Origin: Macrostomum lignano
Taxonomy: Eukaryota
DNA: 64,000 nucleotides
Reading direction: 5' to 3'
Assembly: GCA_002269645.1 (NCBI GenBank)
Contig: NIVC01000245.1
Coordinates: 310,001 to 374,000, forward strand
Shown: in pieces, positions 21,101 through 33,100 of the stretch
Layout of the letters: the number at the start of each line of letters is the position of its first letter
Position numbering within the stretch: position 1 is the stretch's first letter
The notes under the pieces: generated by a model
Databases searched by the model: none
The model's input: the letters and a program-made list of their open reading frames with translations, nothing else
What the model was told of the DNA's origin: nothing
Translations under genes and position numbers: made by a program

Positions 21101-24100
21101 CAACTACTAGCTTTGACTCACTGGGCGATCATTCCACCGCTGGCGCAGCGGCCAGTGCAAGGAGAACCGTGTCCAGCGCCTCCCAGTTCATTGAAGACGA
21201 CATCGAAAGTTATCCGCTGTACAGTTCCGACACTGAAAGGCAGCGAAGGCGGCTGCAACAGAGGCTGTCGTTGCGGATGCAGCGGCGCAGAGGAAACGAT
21301 GGATCAGGAGAAGGAGGAGGTTAGCTGCCAATTACTGCCTGTGTTCTGCGGCTGCTGCTGCTGCCGCTGCTCCACAATAAAAAAGCTAACGAATGAGCTT
21401 TGCCGCTTATTTGCCGTTCTGCAACCATTCCGCTAAGTCTAAGATAAAGCATTTCTATGGAAACGCATGCGTGTAGGGCACTAAAATACGCTCCGAAATT
21501 GTTCAAAATTTATAAGTGTGTAACATGGCTGCACTATTTGTCTTGGCTTCCTGTTTAAGAATCCTAGCTATTAATACCTAAAAAAATTTTCTTAGGAAAA
21601 AGTATATTTGCACGAACAATATTTAACGGTGGAAGTCGCATTTTTGAAATAATAAAGTAGAACTGGCCACATTTACATGCCAGCGCATTAATGTATTCGA
21701 AATCTGACATTCAAATATTACAACCTTCTCGCATTCCGCCCCCACTCCATCCTGCCCATTCCATCTCTATCGACACGCACCAACTCCATTACCAAAAATC
21801 AACCCTCTCGAACCAATCTCCGAAAACGCCTCGGTGAACATTCAATCTGCAGCCGGTCAGAAGCGTCCAACTCCGCCAGCCAGCTTGCCGCTCACGCCAG
21901 CCAAAGCTGCCGCTGCCAACATCGAGCCTGCCAAAGTCGACGCCGATTCATCCGATGCTGCTACCGATGCCGAACGCCGACGCTCTTTGAACTCGTTAAT
22001 GATTCGCGCGATGGAGCACGAGGACAGTCTCCGTTCGGAGATGCGCAGTCTGAGTATTGATGAAGCGCTAAACGCGCCGGACGCAACGCCGCAGGTTGAA
22101 GAGAAGTCAATCAGCGAGGAAATGTCAAGGCCGATATCGCCGATGGAAACGGTCGACTCCGAGATGGCCACCCCGGTGCAGGATGTTGCTCCAAGCTTTG
22201 AATCTGCCAACACAGCCGCCTCAGCAGCCGCCGAATTCTCTAGTCAGGAGGCACTTGAGGAAGCGTTTGAAAAAGCCCGAGAGCTCCCCTCAGCGCAGTC
22301 GTCTTCCTACGCTTCAGCCACAGAAGAAGAAGACGACGATGAGGCTGCCGGGCGAAGCTGGACGGAGCCGCAGCTCCAGTCATCCAGCCTGTTTCACTCC
22401 GGCGGCATCCGGCCGGAGGAGCTCGTGTCACCCACGAAAGAAGAAACTGCAGAGCCCGGACGTCGTTTCTCGGCGCTTGTATCCTCTGAATACACCTACC
22501 GTAGGATGGAGGAGAAGCTGGACAGTCCAGTGCAGAGTCCAGTGGACGCTTACAAGAAGTTTCCTCCTCAGCACCAGCAACCTGCTGCGCCGGAGCAGTC
22601 ACCTCAGCCTGCCCCATCTCAAGAGGATGAAAATTCGGCATTCGATGCCAGACTACAACGAGCCGAAGAGCTGATGGCTGAGGCAGAGTGCGTCATTGTC
22701 AACCGCTACACTGGTATTGACGAAGATATTGAACAGGTTGGCCTTGAGATTGATCGCGTCATACCTGACAGCATGCTGGTGTCAACTACAACAGCAGCCT
22801 CAAAGTCTCCGGATCGTCTGGAACCTGATTGGAGTCGGCAGCTGAGCGAACCCGAGGCTGCTGTGCCAGAGGAAGAGGCTGAAGGTGTCGCCATAGAAAC
22901 CGAGACGCAAGTTCTAGCTGTGAAATTACATAAGCATAAAGATACACTCTCTGGTTCTGCGGAGTACGAACATTTCGCTGAGCGTGAGGAGACCCAAGCT
23001 CCTGCTGAGCCTGAGGAGACTGAAGCTCGTGGTGAGCCTCAAGAGACTGAAGCTCATGCAGAGCCTGAGGAGACTGAAGCTCGTGCTAAGCCTCAAGAGA
23101 TTGAAGCTCGTGCTGAGCAAGAAGAGACTGAAGATCGCGCAGAGCCTGAGGAGACTGAAGCTCATGAAGAGCCTGAGGAGACTGAAGCTCTTGCTGAGCC
23201 TGAGGAGACTGAAGCTCGTGCTAAGCCTCAAGAGACTGAAGCTCATGCAGAGCCTGAGGAGACTGAAGCTCGTGCTGAGCCTGAGGAGACTGAAGCTCGT
23301 GAAGAGCCTGAGGAGACTGAAGCTCGTGCTGAGCCTGAGGAGACTGAAGCTCGTGCTAAGCCTCAAGAGACTGAAGCTCGTGGTGAGCCTGAGGAGACTG
23401 AAGCTCGTGCTAAGCCTGAGGAGACTGAAGCTCGTGCTGAGCCTGAGGAGACTGAAGCTCATGCAGAGCCTGAGGAGACTGAAGCTCGTGCTGAGCCTGA
23501 GGAGACTAAAGCTCGTGCTAAGCCTCAAGAGACTGAAGCTCATGCAGAGCCTGAGGAGACTGAAGCTCGTGCTAAGCCTCAAGAGACTGAAGCTCGTGCT
23601 GAGCCTGAAGACACTAAATCTCGTGCTGAGCCTCAAGAGCCTGAAGCTCGTGCTAAGCCTCAAGAGACCGAAGCTCGTGCTGAGCCTGAGGAGACTGAAG
23701 CTCGTGCTGAGCTAGAAGAGCCTGAAGCTCGTGCTGAGCCTCAAGAGATTGAAGCTCGTGCTGAGCAAGAAGAGACTGAAGCTCGTGCTGAGCCTGAGGA
23801 GACTGAAGCTCGCGCTGAGCCAAAAGAGCCTGAAGCTCGTGCTGAGCCTGAGGAGACTGAAGCTCGTGCTAAGCCTCAAGAGACTGAAGCTCATGATGAG
23901 CCTGAGGAGACTGAAGCTCGTGATGAGCCTGAGGAGCCTGAAGCTCGCGCTGAGCCAGAAGACACTAAATCTCGTGCTGAGCCTGAAGAGACCGAAGCTC
24001 GTGCTGAGCCTCAAGAGACTAAAGCTCGTGCTGAGCCTCAAGAGCCTGAAGCTCGTGTAGAACTAGATGAAACACCAGGTACAATTCAGTCTGAGAAGAC

Positions 24101-30100: not shown

Positions 30101-33100
30101 TCTTGCTGAGCCAGAAGCGGCCGAAGCTCGTGCTGAATCAGAAGAGACTAAAGCTCGTGCCGAGCCTGAGGAGACTGAAGCGCTTGCTGAGCCAGAAGAG
30201 CCTGAAGTTCCTGAAGACTTACTGAAGACATCTGTACTGACTGGAACACAAGTTCTTCCTGTGGAGTTACGTCAGCCAAGTGACCTTGAAGCAGTTACTG
30301 ACAAGGATATTGTTGCTTCAGACAGAGCCACTGGACCAGAATTCGTTCCCAGCAAAAATGACCCAGAAGTATTTATCAAACAAAACCTACCAGAAGAAGA
30401 CACATCGGGTGGCATTCAAAACAAAGATGAAGTGACGTATAAAGTAGAAAATTTTGAGTTTGATTTGGTAAAAAAGCTGGTGAATGACGCAATTGAAACG
30501 GCGTTACGCGCTGAAGAGTCCAGATTCAGAGGTATTTTCGAGCAAAATGGTACCACACAGAAAGAGCCTCGCTCTGTTGAGACCGAGCCACAAGAGGAGC
30601 CTCGCACTGCTGAGTCCGTCGAGACCGAGCCCGAGTCACAGGAGGAGCCTCGCACGGTTGAGTCCCTTGAGCCCGAGCCACAGGAGGAGCCTCGCACGGT
30701 TGAGTCCCTTGAGACCGAGCCACAGGAGGAGCCTCGCACTGTTGAGTCCCTTGAGCCGGAGCCACAGGAGGAGCCTTGCACTGTTGAGTCCGTCGAGACC
30801 GAGCCACAGGAGGAGCCTCGCACTGTTGAGTCCCTTGAGCCCGAGCCACAGGAGGAGCCTCGCACTGTTGAGTCCGTCGAGACCGAGCCACAGGAGGAGC
30901 CTCGCACTGTTGAGTCCGTCGAGACCGAGCCACAGGAGGAGCCTCGCACGGTTGAGTCCCTTGAGACCGAGCCACAGGAGGAGCCTCGCACTGTTGAGTC
31001 CCTTGAGCCGGAGCCACAGGAGGAGCCTCGCACTGTTGAGTCCGTCGAGACCGAGCCACAGGAGGAGCCTCGCACTGTTGAGTCCCTTGAGCCCGAGCCA
31101 CAGGAGGAGCCTTGCACTGTTGAGTCCCTTGAGCCGGAGCCACAGGAGGAGCCTCGCACTGTTGAGTCCGTCGAGACCGAGCCACAGGAGGAGCCTCGCA
31201 CTGTTGAGTCCCTTGAGCCCGAGCCACAGGAGGAGCCTTGCACTGTTGAGTCCCTTGAGCCGGAGCCACAGGAGGAGCCTCGCACTGTTGAGTCTGTTGA
31301 GCCCGAGCCACAGGAGGAGCCTTGCACTGTTGAGTCTATTGAGACCGAGCCACAGGAGGAGCCTCGCACGGTTGAGTCCCTTGAGCCCGAGTCACAGGAG
31401 GAGCCTCGCACTGTTGAGTCCGTTGAGAAGCCTTGCATTTTTGAAATCACTGAGACGGAGTGTCAATCATTACCTGTTCAATTGATACTCCGATCCACTG
31501 GTTCACAGTTTACTGATGAAGAAGGTACTGACTTACAGGCTTCAGATAAGGAGACCGATACAGCAGTTCTCTCTGGAGTTGGAGAACGGCCGCAGTCTGC
31601 TGCTTCTCATGATAATGTAGAGGAACAGCTAAAAACAACAGATGCTCATAAGGATGCTGAGGAACAAACAGAAAGTGAGGAAATTCTTGAAAACTCTGAA
31701 GCAGCGTCTTCGCTTGAAAAAGTTTCAGAAATTGTGATTCACGATGCAAAAACTTCGGATATGTCCGAGCATAAGGAAGAAAAGGGTGATAAGCCATCAA
31801 ATGAAGAGCAGAATGTTGCAGAACTTAACGAAGTAAAATTAAAAGGTGTGGAGCAAGGTACTGCTCAATCAGATGACTTGGACTCAGATCAGAAAACCGA
31901 TGACTCACTAATTGACGCCTGTGCGAGAGATTGTGTTCAAAAAGCTTTGATCGCCGCTTTAAAGAGCCTTTCGGGCGTTAGACATTCAGTTGAGCACGAG
32001 GGCACTGAGACAGATTCGGTTCAAGAGCCCGAGGAAGCTGAAACCCTTCTAGTTGAGCACAAGGACGCGATTCAAGAGCCCCAGGAAGCTGTGATTCTTT
32101 CGGTTGAGCACAAGGACACTGAGTCACAGCCGCTTCAAGAGCCCGAGGAAGCTGAGATTCTTTCGGTTGAGCACAAGGACACTGAGTCACGTACAGTGCA
32201 AGAGCCCGAGGAACCCGAGATTCTTTCGGTTGAGCACAAGGACACTGAGCCACAGCCGCTTCAAGAGCCCGGGGAAGCTGAGATTCTTTCGGTTGAGCAC
32301 AAGGACACTGAGCCACAGCCGCTTCAAGAGCCCGAGGAAGCTGAGATTCTTTCGGTTGAGCACAAGGACACTGAGCCACAGCCGCTTAAAGAGCCCGAGG
32401 AAGCTGTGACAAAGCAGGAAACAGAGCCTCTTCCCAATATGACTGAACCTACATGCAGTGTTGCTAGAACTGAAACATTAGTGCTGGCCGTTCAACTAAG
32501 GATATCAAGCGGTATGGACACTTTTGTATCGACGGGTAACGATTTACGCGACACAGAGTCCCAGTTTGTCGCGTCTCAACTTTCTCCGGGGGAGCTACCA
32601 GTTGAATACGAGTACAAGGACCCTGAGGAACAGTCAGTGGAGTACAAAGAATCTGAGGAGCAGCGTGTTGACTACCAAGACTCCGAAGAGAAGCCTGTGG
32701 ACTACAGAAAGACTGAAGAGCAGCCTGTTGAGTACAAAGAAACTGAAGAGCAGCCTGTTGAGTACAAAGAAACTGAAGAGCAGCCTGTTGAGTACAAAGA
32801 AACTGAAGAGCAGTCTGTTGATTACACGGAGACTGAAGAGCAGCCTGTTGAGTACAGAGAGACTGAAGAGCTGCCTGTTGAGTCCATCGAGGCTGATGAG
32901 CTTGCAGTTGATGGACGAAAGGCTAAAGCAGGTTCACCCTCACAAATGCAGAGTACCTCTCCTACTCGTAAGGAAGGCGAAGAGGGTCATAAACTTTCAG
33001 AGTCTCTTCAGTCTGAGCAGCTGGACGAAGATGAGGCCCAAGTCGTCGAGGATGAAGAAGAAATGCTGTATTCTAACGAGAGCGAACCAGGCAGCGACGC

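What the first reader, a model, noticed from the sequence alone, without database searches (positions are those of the whole stretch)
22990..30360. Two-level coding array: acidic 9-mer blocks separated by six near-identical ~75-aa spacers
Seen: the spacer VELDETPG...FVPSEN occurs at 24057, 24702, 25698, 27018, 27933 and 28947 (spacing 645, 996, 1320, 915, 1014 nt, all multiples of 3). A diverged seventh half-copy lies at about 30225-30360. Several copies share the same upstream run of variant 9-mers (...[33 protein letters not shown]), implying block duplication by unequal exchange. Known: the UNC-44 giant isoform has repetitive S/T/E/P blocks split by short hydrophobic segments, and Drosophila Ank2-XL has ~76-aa repeats. 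Inference: a beads-on-a-string ruler in which conserved binding beads are held apart by extensible acidic linkers, reached with unrelated sequence.
Basis: partly seen in the sequence, partly recalled or inferred. Interest (0 to 1): 0.72.

Follow-up and report, generated by a model that had tools for sequence, protein, structure and literature searches.

The report
Flatworm giant-ankyrin exon with nested repeats
The region is the middle of a 13.8-kb "giant" exon of the ankyrin gene of the flatworm Macrostomum lignano, in which runs of an acidic 9-residue repeat are interrupted by recently duplicated 75-residue spacers; the new point is an 11-residue hydrophobic motif (TETxVLAVxLR) in those spacers that also recurs in the same animal's spectraplakin.

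Summary
Six 75-aa spacers start at 24057, 24702, 25698, 27018, 27933 and 28947. A diverged seventh lies at 30213-30359. Seven blocks of about 217 acidic 9-mers (consensus ETEARAEPE) lie between them.

The array sits in one open exon (21861-35684, 4607 codons). That exon follows the ANK, ZU5-ZU5-UPA and death-domain exons of a canonical ankyrin of Macrostomum lignano. This is the protostome giant-ankyrin layout described by Jegla 2016.

The six spacers are 97.8-100% identical in DNA. Five of their six substitutions are nonsynonymous, and the adjacent 9-mers are just as identical. Their sameness therefore reflects recent block duplication or gene conversion, not constraint. A second assembled version of the locus has five spacers, in the same marker order.

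AlphaFold gives no folded "bead" (mean pLDDT 60.7). Old diverged module copies sit at every boundary between repeat arrays (22875, 30213, 31425, 32445). They keep a 45-aa core (dN/dS about 0.19) and the motif T-E-T-x-V-L-A-V-x-L-R. The same motif occurs eight times in a giant exon of the M. lignano spectraplakin.

Best reading: a polyanionic disordered tether carrying regularly spaced short docking motifs. It is a new variant of a known kind. The partner is unknown.

The parts
955..1839 (+). ankyrin-repeat exon of the same gene (a further ANK exon lies at 6096-6704)
   Evidence: Pfam Ank/Ank_2 E 1e-65 and below; tblastn of the M. lignano short-isoform model P0003
16985..19410 (+). ZU5-ZU5-UPA-death-domain exons (16985-17503, 17500-18045, 18424-19410)
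   Evidence: Pfam ZU5 7.5e-23, UPA_2 3.7e-09, Death 3.4e-13; 99.4-99.7% to P0001/P0003
19737..20702 (+). small linker exons (19737-19940, 20051-20173, 20529-20702); splice donor CCT|gt after 20702
   Evidence: tblastn of P0001; sequence
21861..35684 (+). giant exon: 4607 codons plus stop; acceptor cag|AAG at 21860/21861
   Evidence: 4616-aa open frame; UniProt models P0001/P0002 splice into it at KRPTPPASL and are 100% identical over 21861-23030; acceptor sequence; E 27%, S+E+T+D+K+P 59.1%, net charge -1029
22875..22982 (+). module copy c0 ([11 protein letters not shown]...), just before the 9-mer array; lacks the second half of the module
   Evidence: HMM domain 39.5 bits
22989..30209 (+). 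two-level array: seven blocks of 9-aa units (22989-24056, 24282-24701, 24927-25697, 25923-27017, 27243-27932, 28158-28946, 29172-30209; 15.6-40.6 units each) separated by six spacers
24057..24281 (+). spacer 1 (75 aa); identical in DNA to spacer 4
24702..24926 (+). spacer 2 (Q30K)
25698..25922 (+). spacer 3 (Q30K, F70I); the extra copy relative to the second locus version
27018..27242 (+). spacer 4 (consensus)
27933..28157 (+). spacer 5 (Q46R, K69R)
28947..29171 (+). spacer 6 (V1A)
   Evidence: HMM 76.8 bits; dS 0.97, dN 0.19 against the spacer core
30577..31428 (+). array of 20 x 14-aa units ([15 protein letters not shown])
   Evidence: TRF period 42, 20.1 copies, 90% matches; three units fewer in L001
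31425..31577 (+). module copy c8 ([21 protein letters not shown]...)
   Evidence: HMM 67.1 bits
32071..32406 (+). array of about 5 x 21-aa units ([21 protein letters not shown])
   Evidence: TRF period 63, 5.3 copies; one unit fewer in L001
32445..32579 (+). module copy c9 ([38 protein letters not shown])
   Evidence: HMM 63.3 bits
32610..32911 (+). array of about 9 x 10-aa units ([10 protein letters not shown])
   Evidence: TRF period 30, 9.1 copies
32912..35684 (+). non-repetitive acidic, Ser-rich C-terminal tail ending in the stop codon
   Evidence: translation; same stop in L001; no Pfam hit

Best explanation
Shown. The window holds the canonical ankyrin gene of the free-living flatworm Macrostomum lignano. 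Region 22990-30360 is the central part of its 13.8-kb giant exon, which lies after the death domain as in other protostome giant ankyrins. The exon encodes a strongly polyanionic product (net charge about -1029) with the composition typical of giant-ankyrin long exons and no predicted fold in the spacer tested. It is built from four different short tandem arrays (9, 14, 21 and 10 aa). At every array boundary, and six times inside the 9-mer array, sits a copy of one module. The module's core is the motif T-E-T-x-V-L-A-V-x-L-R, usually followed about 20 residues later by D-I/L-x-x-S-D-R/K-x-T-G-x-x-F-V-P/A-S. The six near-identical spacers, each with about 15-30 flanking residues of characteristic 9-mers, form a higher-order repeat. 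A second assembled version of the locus keeps the same order of spacer variants but has five spacers and different unit counts in every array, always in frame.

Inferred. The higher-order repeat arose by recent unequal exchange or gene conversion. The acidic arrays act as extended, mutually repelling, entropic-spring-like linkers, 130-440 residues long. The hydrophobic motif is a short linear docking or 'sticker' site that binds as an extended strand. It would bind either a partner shared with the spectraplakin, whose 6.9-kb exon carries eight copies, or another copy of itself. This would give the giant isoform multivalent, regularly spaced attachment points in the cortical spectrin-microtubule cytoskeleton of neurons. 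The partner, and neuronal expression, are not shown.
For: Gene identity: Pfam finds ANK, ZU5, UPA and Death domains. The best homologues are M. lignano UniRef ankyrin models, which are 100% identical over 21861-23030. Splice signals are present. ZU5-UPA-DD is 40-55% identical to ankyrin-2/-3 across animals.

Giant-exon criteria of Jegla 2016 (PMC5135030): one long ORF, position after the death domain, and S+E+T+D+K+P of 59.1% against their >55%.

Recent duplication: spacers differ at 0-5 of 225 nt, 5 nonsynonymous and 1 synonymous. Flanking units are equally identical. Out-of-register 9-mer windows are only about 85-92% identical.

Copy-number dynamics: L001 (GCA_002269645.1) has five spacers with the same marker order. 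It has three fewer 14-aa units and one fewer 21-aa unit. Its ORF is open and uses the same stop.

Constraint on the module: c1 against c7 gives dS 0.97, dN 0.19 and a ratio of 0.19. Other pairs are saturated at synonymous sites yet keep the motif. Motif codons differ synonymously between copies.

Second protein: a profile of five module variants searched against 1.84 billion proteins hits only M. lignano PAA91820 (the partial model clustered with PAA81789), at E 3.7e-14 with 7 stretches. The full-length cluster member PAA81789 has CH, spectrin and plakin-repeat features and 8 motifs, all in one exon.

No fold: mean pLDDT 60.7, pTM 0.18. No membrane segment: maximum Kyte-Doolittle(19) is 1.43.
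Against: There is no expression or protein evidence here. The NCBI model for this gene skips the giant exon, and the UniProt models stop inside the first 9-mers. Between the two locus versions the exon tail shows pN/pS of about 0.95 (8 synonymous, 26 nonsynonymous), so short-term constraint is weak or the counts are too small. The motif was found only in Macrostomum. A single copy scores 17 bits or less, so single-copy occurrences elsewhere would have been missed. No partner is identified and PDB gave nothing. The spectraplakin copies share only the 11-aa motif, not the second half of the module. The AlphaFold run used a 7-sequence alignment, so 'no fold' is weak evidence.
Confidence: 0.7

Rival explanations
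1. One reading: the 75-aa spacers are conserved, folded binding beads whose near-identity reflects strong purifying selection, held apart by linkers as a molecular ruler.
For: The spacers are nearly identical in protein. Motif-to-motif spacing is fairly regular, 215-440 aa, across four different linker types. Ank2-XL repeats have been postulated to act as spacers (PMC5135030).
Against: Identity extends to synonymous sites and to the flanking 9-mers, and 5 of 6 changes are nonsynonymous. Orthologous spacers and 9-mers diverge equally between locus versions. The N-terminal 30 aa of the spacer is absent from all old copies. AlphaFold finds no domain.
Confidence: 0.15
2. Assembly artefact: the number and arrangement of spacers is produced by mis-assembly of a shorter repeat, through expansion or mis-joining of long noisy reads.
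For: Two assembled versions disagree, with six spacers against five and different unit counts. Older models end inside the array. The M. lignano genome is highly repetitive.
Against: Both versions keep the same order of diagnostic spacer variants (consensus, Q30K, consensus, Q46R, V1A). Both keep an unbroken frame over 13 kb and the same stop. They differ by one clean unequal-exchange step. The blocks are not copies of each other but have distinct unit orders.
Confidence: 0.08
3. An untranslated minisatellite: the open frame is a by-product of stop-free repeats lying in an intron or 3' region of the short-isoform gene.
For: The NCBI gene model treats it as an intron. Antisense and other-frame ORFs are also open inside the arrays. 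pN/pS between versions is about 0.95.
Against: About 2,600 non-repeat codons are open only in this frame: the N-terminal 385, the spacers and the 1,800-aa tail. There is a canonical acceptor that is used by UniProt models. The composition is that of giant-ankyrin exons. Diversity among 9-mers is 0.20 at the third codon position against 0.09-0.12 at the first and second. dN/dS is 0.19 between old modules. All length differences between versions are in frame.
Confidence: 0.05
4. The hydrophobic segments are membrane-inserted, as was first proposed for the seven 'potential transmembrane domains' of UNC-44 AO13.
For: The AO13 precedent, as in the title of Otsuka 2002 cited in PMC7159925.
Against: The hydrophobic run is only 6-8 residues (VLAVxL) and is followed by Arg. 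The maximum Kyte-Doolittle(19) over the whole exon is 1.43, and that peak is not at the motif. The surrounding sequence is polyanionic.
Confidence: 0.02
5. The motif is a self-association 'sticker': copies pair with each other, within or between giant ankyrin and spectraplakin molecules, so the exon is a stickers-and-spacers network former rather than a dock for a third protein.
For: The pattern alternates hydrophobic residues in a beta-strand-like way, is multivalent (10 and 8 copies) and is separated by highly charged disordered spacers. The second conserved element DIVVSD could pair with VLAVQL.
Against: AlphaFold predicts no strand or hairpin. No experiment bears on it. The polyanionic context opposes self-association.
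Confidence: 0.15

Closest known systems
C. elegans UNC-44 giant isoform AO13
   Same: It is a canonical ankyrin with a giant coding segment after the death domain. It has six blocks of S/T/E/P-rich repeats separated by seven short hydrophobic domains (PMC7159925). This is the same two-level 'acidic repeat block / hydrophobic spacer' plan, with a similar number of blocks.
   Different: No sequence similarity was detected: AO13 did not appear in the profile search. The units here are 9 aa, rich in E/A/P/T/R and almost free of Ser. The six spacers here are 98-100% identical recent duplicates. The function of the AO13 H domains is also unknown, since UNC-119 binds the UNC-44 C-terminus and not the repeat fragments.
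Drosophila Ank2-XL
   Same: It is a protostome giant ankyrin exon after the death domain. Its repeat unit is about 76 aa and is proposed to act as a spacer, and the region is needed for microtubule organisation (PMC5135030; PMC6703079).
   Different: Ank2-XL has 93 head-to-tail 76-aa repeats. Here the 75-aa units are never adjacent; they are separated by 140-365 aa of 9-mers. There is no detectable sequence similarity.
Bilaterian giant-ankyrin long exons in general (Jegla et al. 2016)
   Same: A single multi-kb ORF, a position after the death domain in protostomes, the Glu/Ser/Thr/Asp/Lys/Pro composition bias, and repeat arrays in a subset that are homologous only among close relatives.
   Different: The 27-bp unit and about 217 copies fall outside their reported 36-228 bp and 5 to >160 copies. 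Flatworms were not in their sample. They did not report a motif that punctuates the arrays.
Vertebrate giant ankyrin-B (15 x 12-aa repeats plus BG-box)
   Same: Short tandem repeats next to a short conserved element within a disordered giant exon, forming a multivalent binding module (PMC7401806).
   Different: That exon lies before the death domain. Its repeats are basic (pI 10.6) and bind microtubules directly. The repeats here are strongly acidic (net -3 per 9-mer), so they should repel tubulin tails.
M. lignano spectraplakin-like protein PAA81789.1 (P0130)
   Same: It carries eight copies of (T/S)-E-T-x-V-L-A-V-x-L-(R/Q), spaced 133-307 aa apart, in an acidic disordered region encoded by one 6.9-kb exon.
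   Different: The protein family is different (CH domains, spectrin and plakin repeats). The linkers between motifs are non-repetitive. Only the 11-aa motif is shared, not the second half of the ankyrin module.
Titin PEVK region (from general knowledge, not tested here)
   Same: Short P/E-rich repeats alternating with other segments form a disordered, highly charged entropic spring. This is an analogy for what the acidic blocks may work like.
   Different: The gene, the sequence and the cell type are unrelated.

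Membership tests
Canonical ankyrin (ANK repeats + ZU5-ZU5-UPA + death domain) | ANK-repeat array upstream of a ZU5-ZU5-UPA cassette and a death domain in one gene | tested here: met
   Pfam hits in colinear + strand exons; exon map from P0003/P0001; 40-55% identity to ankyrin-2/-3
Giant-ankyrin long exon (Jegla 2016) | A single uninterrupted coding exon of several kb | tested here: met
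   21861-35684, 13,824 nt
Giant-ankyrin long exon (Jegla 2016) | Position after the death domain (the protostome position) | tested here: met
   Death domain at 18424-19410, giant exon from 21861
Giant-ankyrin long exon (Jegla 2016) | [quoted passage not shown] | tested here: met
   59.1% over the whole exon; Glu alone is 27%, but Ser only 6.2%
Giant-ankyrin long exon (Jegla 2016) | Inclusion in an alternatively spliced, neuron-enriched giant transcript | not testable with these tools
   Only predicted models splice into it. The short-isoform model skips it.
UNC-44 AO13-type STEP/H architecture | Blocks of acidic S/T/E/P-type repeats separated by short hydrophobic segments | tested here: met
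   Seven 9-mer blocks plus three other arrays, with ten hydrophobic modules at their boundaries. Met by architecture only.
UNC-44 AO13-type STEP/H architecture | Sequence homology of the repeats or spacers | tested here: not met
   The profile search of 1.84 billion representatives returned no nematode or other non-Macrostomum ankyrin. I could not verify that AO13 is in the library.
Drosophila Ank2-XL 76-aa repeat array | Head-to-tail tandem array of the ~76-aa unit | tested here: not met
   The 75-aa units are 645-1320 nt apart and never adjacent.
Folded protein domain ('bead') | A confident predicted fold or a match to a known domain | tested here: not met
   No Pfam hit. AlphaFold mean pLDDT 60.7, pTM 0.18. 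No PDB match. The alignment was shallow, so this is weak.
Transmembrane segment | About 19 or more hydrophobic residues | tested here: not met
   The hydrophobic run is 6-8 residues; maximum Kyte-Doolittle(19) is 1.43.
LC8 (dynein light chain) TQT-type motif | An invariant Gln flanked by T/V within an 8-residue strand | tested here: not met
   TQV is present in most ankyrin copies, but the Gln position is A, Y, H, V, L or M in the other copies.
SUMO-interacting motif (hydrophobic core flanked by acidic or S/T residues; recalled from general knowledge) | Core [VIL][VIL]x[VIL] next to acidic or phosphorylatable residues | tested here: inconclusive
   V-L-A-V preceded by T-E-T fits the loose pattern. 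The pattern is very degenerate, and the conserved L and R beyond it are not explained.

The most novel reading that the evidence does not exclude
T-E-T-x-V-L-A-V-x-L-R is a previously undescribed short linear motif. Through it, two unrelated giant cytoskeletal linkers of one animal, giant ankyrin (10 copies) and spectraplakin (8 copies), would engage the same partner or each other. Selection would maintain a few-hundred-residue polyanionic spacing between copies whatever the linker sequence. That would amount to a genuine multivalent 'stickers on a charged string' scaffold coupling the membrane skeleton to microtubules. The hydrophobic 'H' domains of UNC-44 AO13 would be its functional counterpart.
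Probability: 0.3. Interest if true: 0.65.

Novelty: new variant of a known kind. Interest (0 to 1): 0.45.

Why it matters
Giant ankyrins organise axons, including initial segments, microtubule anchoring and synapse stability. Almost nothing is known about how their huge, fast-evolving, disordered exons work. In C. elegans the blocks-and-hydrophobic-spacers region has had no assigned function since 2002.

This case has three uses. First, it extends giant ankyrins to flatworms, a phylum absent from the comparative survey. Second, it is a clear instance of in-frame copy-number change in coding higher-order repeats between two versions of one locus. Third, and most usefully, it isolates an 11-residue motif that is the only part kept across old paralogous copies and that is shared with the spectraplakin.

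That gives a concrete peptide for pull-downs and mutagenesis in M. lignano, which from general knowledge is a transgenic-tractable model. It also gives a pattern with which to re-examine the H domains of UNC-44. If the motif turns out to be only a lineage-specific quirk, the finding is an ordinary, if elaborate, giant-ankyrin repeat exon.

Tried and rejected
1. A profile of five module variants against the 5.8-billion-protein word-indexed database gave no hit. The full HMMER scan was needed.

2. Three of that scan's five hits were rejected as spurious. P0127 is a repetitive TNTAGLAAELIARSDGD protein that looks like a phage tail fibre by eye (Pfam gave only a sub-threshold SAP hit). P0128 is a junk repeat. 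P0129 is a bacterial Ig/cadherin-like protein.

3. The third homologue search, with ZU5-UPA-DD, returned only models of about 1000 aa or less. No foreign giant isoforms could therefore be fetched for direct comparison.

4. Cestode ankyrin loci (Hymenolepis diminuta L003, Schistocephalus solidus L004) have no ORF of 250 aa or more (ignoring frames made of N-run gaps in L004) and no motif within 10 kb downstream. This is inconclusive, because the paralogue may differ or the exon may lie further away.

5. The PDB profile search gave only E of about 1.6 noise.

6. The LC8 TQT-motif idea was rejected because the Gln is not conserved.

7. The idea that the motif is an RNA or splice signal was rejected because its codons differ synonymously between copies.

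8. Long co-duplicated blocks: ungapped segments of 765-1335 nt around spacer pairs are only 92-96% identical. That is little above the 85-92% background of out-of-register 9-mers. The clearly co-duplicated unit is therefore the spacer plus about 40-100 nt on each side.

9. The 1995 unc-44 paper holds no sequence detail on the H domains.

Full report

Yes, exactly. The window has one 4616-codon open frame on the + strand, 21834-35684. In it the 75-aa string VELDETPG...FVPSEN starts at 24057, 24702, 25698, 27018, 27933 and 28947.

Between and around these lie seven blocks of a 9-aa unit, with modal peptide ETEARAEPE:

| Block | Window coordinates | 9-aa units |
|---|---|---|
| 0 | 22989-24056 | 39.6 |
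| 1 | 24282-24701 | 15.6 |
| 2 | 24927-25697 | 28.6 |
| 3 | 25923-27017 | 40.6 |
| 4 | 27243-27932 | 25.6 |
| 5 | 28158-28946 | 29.2 |
| 6 | 29172-30209 | 38.4 |

- The blocks total 1957 aa, about 217 units.
- Tandem Repeats Finder sees the 27-nt period over 22977-30207. Its figure of 268.8 copies counts the spacers as well.
- I parsed 212 units, giving 47 peptide variants and 73 DNA variants.
- Every block after a spacer opens with [20 protein letters not shown].
- Every block before a spacer ends with ...QEPEAR. Four of the six end with [32 protein letters not shown].
- The "seventh half-copy" is real: 30213-30359, 65% identical in protein over 48 codons.

**2. What gene is this?**

- Upstream on the same strand Pfam finds ankyrin repeats (895-1854, 6051-6773), ZU5 (16850-17569), ZU5/UPA (17539-18069) and UPA plus a death domain (18514-19497).
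- A homologue search identifies the organism as the free-living flatworm Macrostomum lignano.
- UniRef models A0A1I8GX06 (P0001) and P0002 run through ZU5-UPA-DD and three small exons. They then splice (...DFVRLP|KRPTPPASL...) into the big frame and are 100% identical to window 21861-23030.
- The genome shows a CCT|gt donor after 20702 and a cag|AAG acceptor before 21861. The exon is therefore 21861-35684: 13,824 nt, 4607 codons plus stop.
- Those models end inside the first 9-mers and so are truncated.
- The NCBI short-isoform model (P0003, 1618 aa) skips the exon. Its gene range ends downstream of it.
- ZU5-UPA-DD is 40-55% identical to ankyrin-2/-3 of many animals.

This is the arrangement Jegla et al. 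2016 describe for protostome giant ankyrins. It has a multi-kb exon after the death domain and a composition dominated by Glu, Ser, Thr, Asp, Lys and Pro (>55%). Repeat arrays occur in a subset of species and are homologous only among close relatives (PMC5135030). Here S+E+T+D+K+P is 59.1%, Glu is 27% and the net charge is about -1029. Flatworms were not in their survey, and I found no paper on the Macrostomum ankyrin.

**3. Why are the six spacers so alike?**

- At the DNA level they differ at only 0-5 of 225 positions (pi 0.0098). Spacers 1 and 4 are identical.
- Of the six distinct substitutions, five are nonsynonymous and one synonymous.
- The 9-mers that are positionally homologous, immediately left and right of the spacers, are just as alike (pi 0.008-0.018).
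- 9-mers in general are much more diverse: pi is 0.12, 0.09 and 0.20 at codon positions 1, 2 and 3. Out-of-register 300-nt windows are 85-92% identical.
- Beyond about 40-100 nt from a spacer, identity between blocks falls to 92-96%.

The near-identity is therefore the signature of recent duplication or gene conversion of a unit made of a few 9-mers, the spacer and a few more 9-mers. It is not a signature of purifying selection.

**4. A second version of the locus**

The short-isoform model led to contig NIVC01000909.1 of assembly GCA_002269645.1 (L001). It is a different copy of the same locus.

- The ANK-exon region is about 95% identical and lacks the 4-kb LINE-like insertion.
- Window 16800-22950 is 99.85-100% identical.
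- Its giant frame is open for 4327 codons and ends at the same stop.
- It has five spacers and six 9-mer blocks of 39.6, 36.6, 45.6, 21.6, 32.2 and 25.4 units.
- Diagnostic spacer variants occur in the same order in both versions: consensus, Q30K, consensus, Q46R, V1A. The window has two Q30K spacers where L001 has one.
- L001 block 1 reads like the start of window block 1 joined to the end of window block 2. That is one unequal exchange.
- Further down, L001 has three fewer 14-aa units, one fewer 21-aa unit and two single-residue indels, all in frame. There are 25 mismatches in 1759 aligned residues.
- Orthologous spacers differ at 3 of 1125 nt and 9-mer block 0 at 4 of 1068 nt, which is the same rate.
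- pN/pS in the tail is about 0.95, from 8 synonymous and 26 nonsynonymous changes. Short-term constraint is therefore not visible, although the counts are small.

I cannot tell whether the two versions are alleles, homeologues or different lines. Either way, two independently assembled sequences support the architecture and show that copy number is labile. Only spanning reads can exclude assembly error in the exact counts.

**5. What is conserved**

The spacer core recurs in old, diverged form outside the six copies:

| Copy | Window coordinates | Position |
|---|---|---|
| c0 | 22875-22982 | before the 9-mer array |
| c7 | 30213-30359 | after the 9-mer array |
| c8 | 31425-31577 | after the 20 x 14-aa array |
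| c9 | 32445-32579 | between the 5 x 21-aa and 9 x 10-aa arrays |

- Every boundary between repeat arrays carries one copy.
- The first 30 residues of the 75-aa spacer are not part of the conserved module.
- c1 against c7 gives dS 0.97, dN 0.19 and a ratio of 0.19. The other pairs are saturated at synonymous sites yet keep T-E-T-x-V-L-A-V-x-L-R. Most also keep D-I/L-x-x-S-D-R/K-x-T-G-x-x-F-V-P/A-S.
- Within the motif the codons differ synonymously between copies (ACG/ACC/ACA, CTA/CTT/CTG, GTG/GTA/GTT, TTA/TTG/CTA, CGT/AGG). The conservation therefore acts on the peptide, not on DNA or RNA.

**6. The motif in a second protein**

A profile of the five module variants was scored against 1.84 billion representative proteins. 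It gave one genuine foreign hit: P0126, E 3.7e-14, 7 stretches.

- P0126 is M. lignano PAA91820, a partial model. Its full-length cluster member PAA81789.1 (P0130, 5543 aa) has CH domains, spectrin repeats and plakin repeats, so it is a spectraplakin-like protein.
- It carries eight copies of (T/S)-E-T-x-V-L-A-V-x-L-(R/Q), spaced 133-307 aa apart.
- All eight lie in one 6.9-kb exon encoding an acidic region without recognisable domains.
- The pattern E[TF].VLAV.L occurs 8 times in the ankyrin exon and 5 times in the spectraplakin exon. About 0.000-0.001 are expected, and 0 of 2000 shuffles reach the observed count.
- The other three hits are unrelated repetitive proteins.
- Nothing outside Macrostomum reached significance. 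A single motif scores 17 bits or less, so only multi-copy proteins could have been found.

**7. Physical nature**

- AlphaFold2 on the 82-residue spacer with a 7-sequence alignment gives mean pLDDT 60.7 and pTM 0.18. It predicts only a 7-residue helix, with the highest confidence (70-79) around the motif.
- There is no Pfam or PDB match.
- The hydrophobic run is 6-8 residues. The maximum 19-residue hydropathy in the exon is 1.43 and does not fall at the motif, so this is not a membrane segment.
- The 9-mer carries net charge -3, with a proline every ninth residue. From general knowledge, this argues for an expanded disordered polyanion rather than a long helix.

**8. Most likely mechanism**

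*Shown:*
- It is a giant-ankyrin exon.
- It is a hierarchical repeat with recent, in-frame copy-number change.
- It has a peptide-level-conserved hydrophobic motif, regularly spaced (215-440 aa) in polyanionic sequence and shared with the spectraplakin.

*Inferred:*
- The acidic arrays act as extended entropic linkers.
- The motif is a short linear docking or sticker site bound as an extended strand, which would give the giant isoform multivalent, spaced attachment points.
- Because vertebrate, fly and worm giant ankyrins all couple the membrane skeleton to microtubules by different means, the cortical microtubule-spectrin system is the likeliest context. The means are direct basic repeats in giant ankyrin-B (PMC7401806), Ank2-XL with Futsch (PMC6703079) and UNC-119/UNC-33 in C. 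elegans (PMC7159925). Spectraplakins are also actin-microtubule linkers.
- The acidic repeats themselves are unlikely to bind acidic tubulin tails.

The partner is unknown. An LC8 motif is excluded because the Gln is not conserved. A SUMO-interacting-motif-like pattern fits only loosely.

**9. Comparison with the known**

- The closest architecture is UNC-44 AO13, which has six STEP blocks and seven hydrophobic domains and no assigned function for that region.
- Drosophila Ank2-XL shares the unit length of about 76 aa, but as a simple head-to-tail array.
- The 27-bp unit and about 217 copies lie outside the 36-228 bp and 5 to >160 range reported by Jegla et al.
- No sequence homology to any of these was detectable, in line with their finding that long-exon sequence is not conserved over large distances.

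**10. Verdict**

The gene family, the architecture and the duplication mechanism are right. The reading of near-identity as constraint, and of the spacer as a bead, is wrong.
- This is a new variant of a known kind.
- The value lies in the motif shared with the spectraplakin, which makes the long-unexplained hydrophobic-spacer design of invertebrate giant ankyrins experimentally approachable.

Noticed in passing
window 2738-5851 (+), within 2124-5875: An intact 1037-aa LINE-like ORF (endonuclease plus reverse transcriptase, Pfam RVT_1 1.7e-29) sits in the intron between the two ANK exons. About 4 kb of this intron, the interval holding the ORF, is absent from the second version of the locus (L001), where window positions 1948 and 6000 map only about 335 bp apart. 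This points to a recent or polymorphic insertion.
   Followed up: partly
L002 24779-38215 (+) (GCA_002269645.1 NIVC01000513.1): An unannotated 4479-codon open frame lies inside an 'intron' of the spectraplakin gene model. It begins with plakin-repeat-like sequence, followed by roughly 300 tandem 11-13-aa units (TTGLAGSEQQP). It has no TETxVLAVxLR motif. It is probably a second, alternative giant exon.
   Followed up: partly
P0130 about aa 2560-2960 (L002 21693-24086): The spectraplakin model also contains about 40 tandem 11-aa units (MSTQQVDPAQS/PG). Giant cytoskeletal genes of M. lignano seem generally prone to in-frame short-unit arrays.
   Followed up: no
window 8521-16163 and 40196-41146, 43489-44765, 46754-47134, 50256-50873: Long intronic and downstream simple or low-complexity repeat tracts with extreme strand skew (GC skew down to -0.65). 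They give long spurious ORFs in several frames.
   Followed up: no
window 1-7000 vs 16800-22950 compared with L001; window 35685-40000: Divergence between the two locus versions is mosaic. It is about 5% in the ANK-exon region, 0-0.15% from ZU5 to the start of the giant exon (introns included), about 0.3-0.7% in the giant exon and 2.5-3.8% in non-coding DNA after the stop. This suggests gene conversion or a recombinant haplotype or homeologue.
   Followed up: partly
window 54332-55343 (+): Overlapping ORFs follow a 'PDWAALLAAA' minisatellite. They include a stretch (…WWYMDGTFNIVHYPFIQLYSIHGF…) that looks like a DNA-transposase remnant. It was not tested against any family.
   Followed up: no
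L001 43768 (about window 37.3 kb): The NCBI short-isoform gene model ends about 1.7 kb downstream of the giant exon's stop. The last 9 residues of P0003 did not map upstream of the giant exon. The short isoform therefore appears to skip the giant exon and use a tiny terminal exon beyond it. The exon itself was not located.
   Followed up: partly
L003 (Hymenolepis diminuta), L004 (Schistocephalus solidus): The cestode ankyrin ZU5-UPA gene models have no long open frame within 10 kb downstream. These paralogues may lack a giant exon, or it may lie further away.
   Followed up: partly
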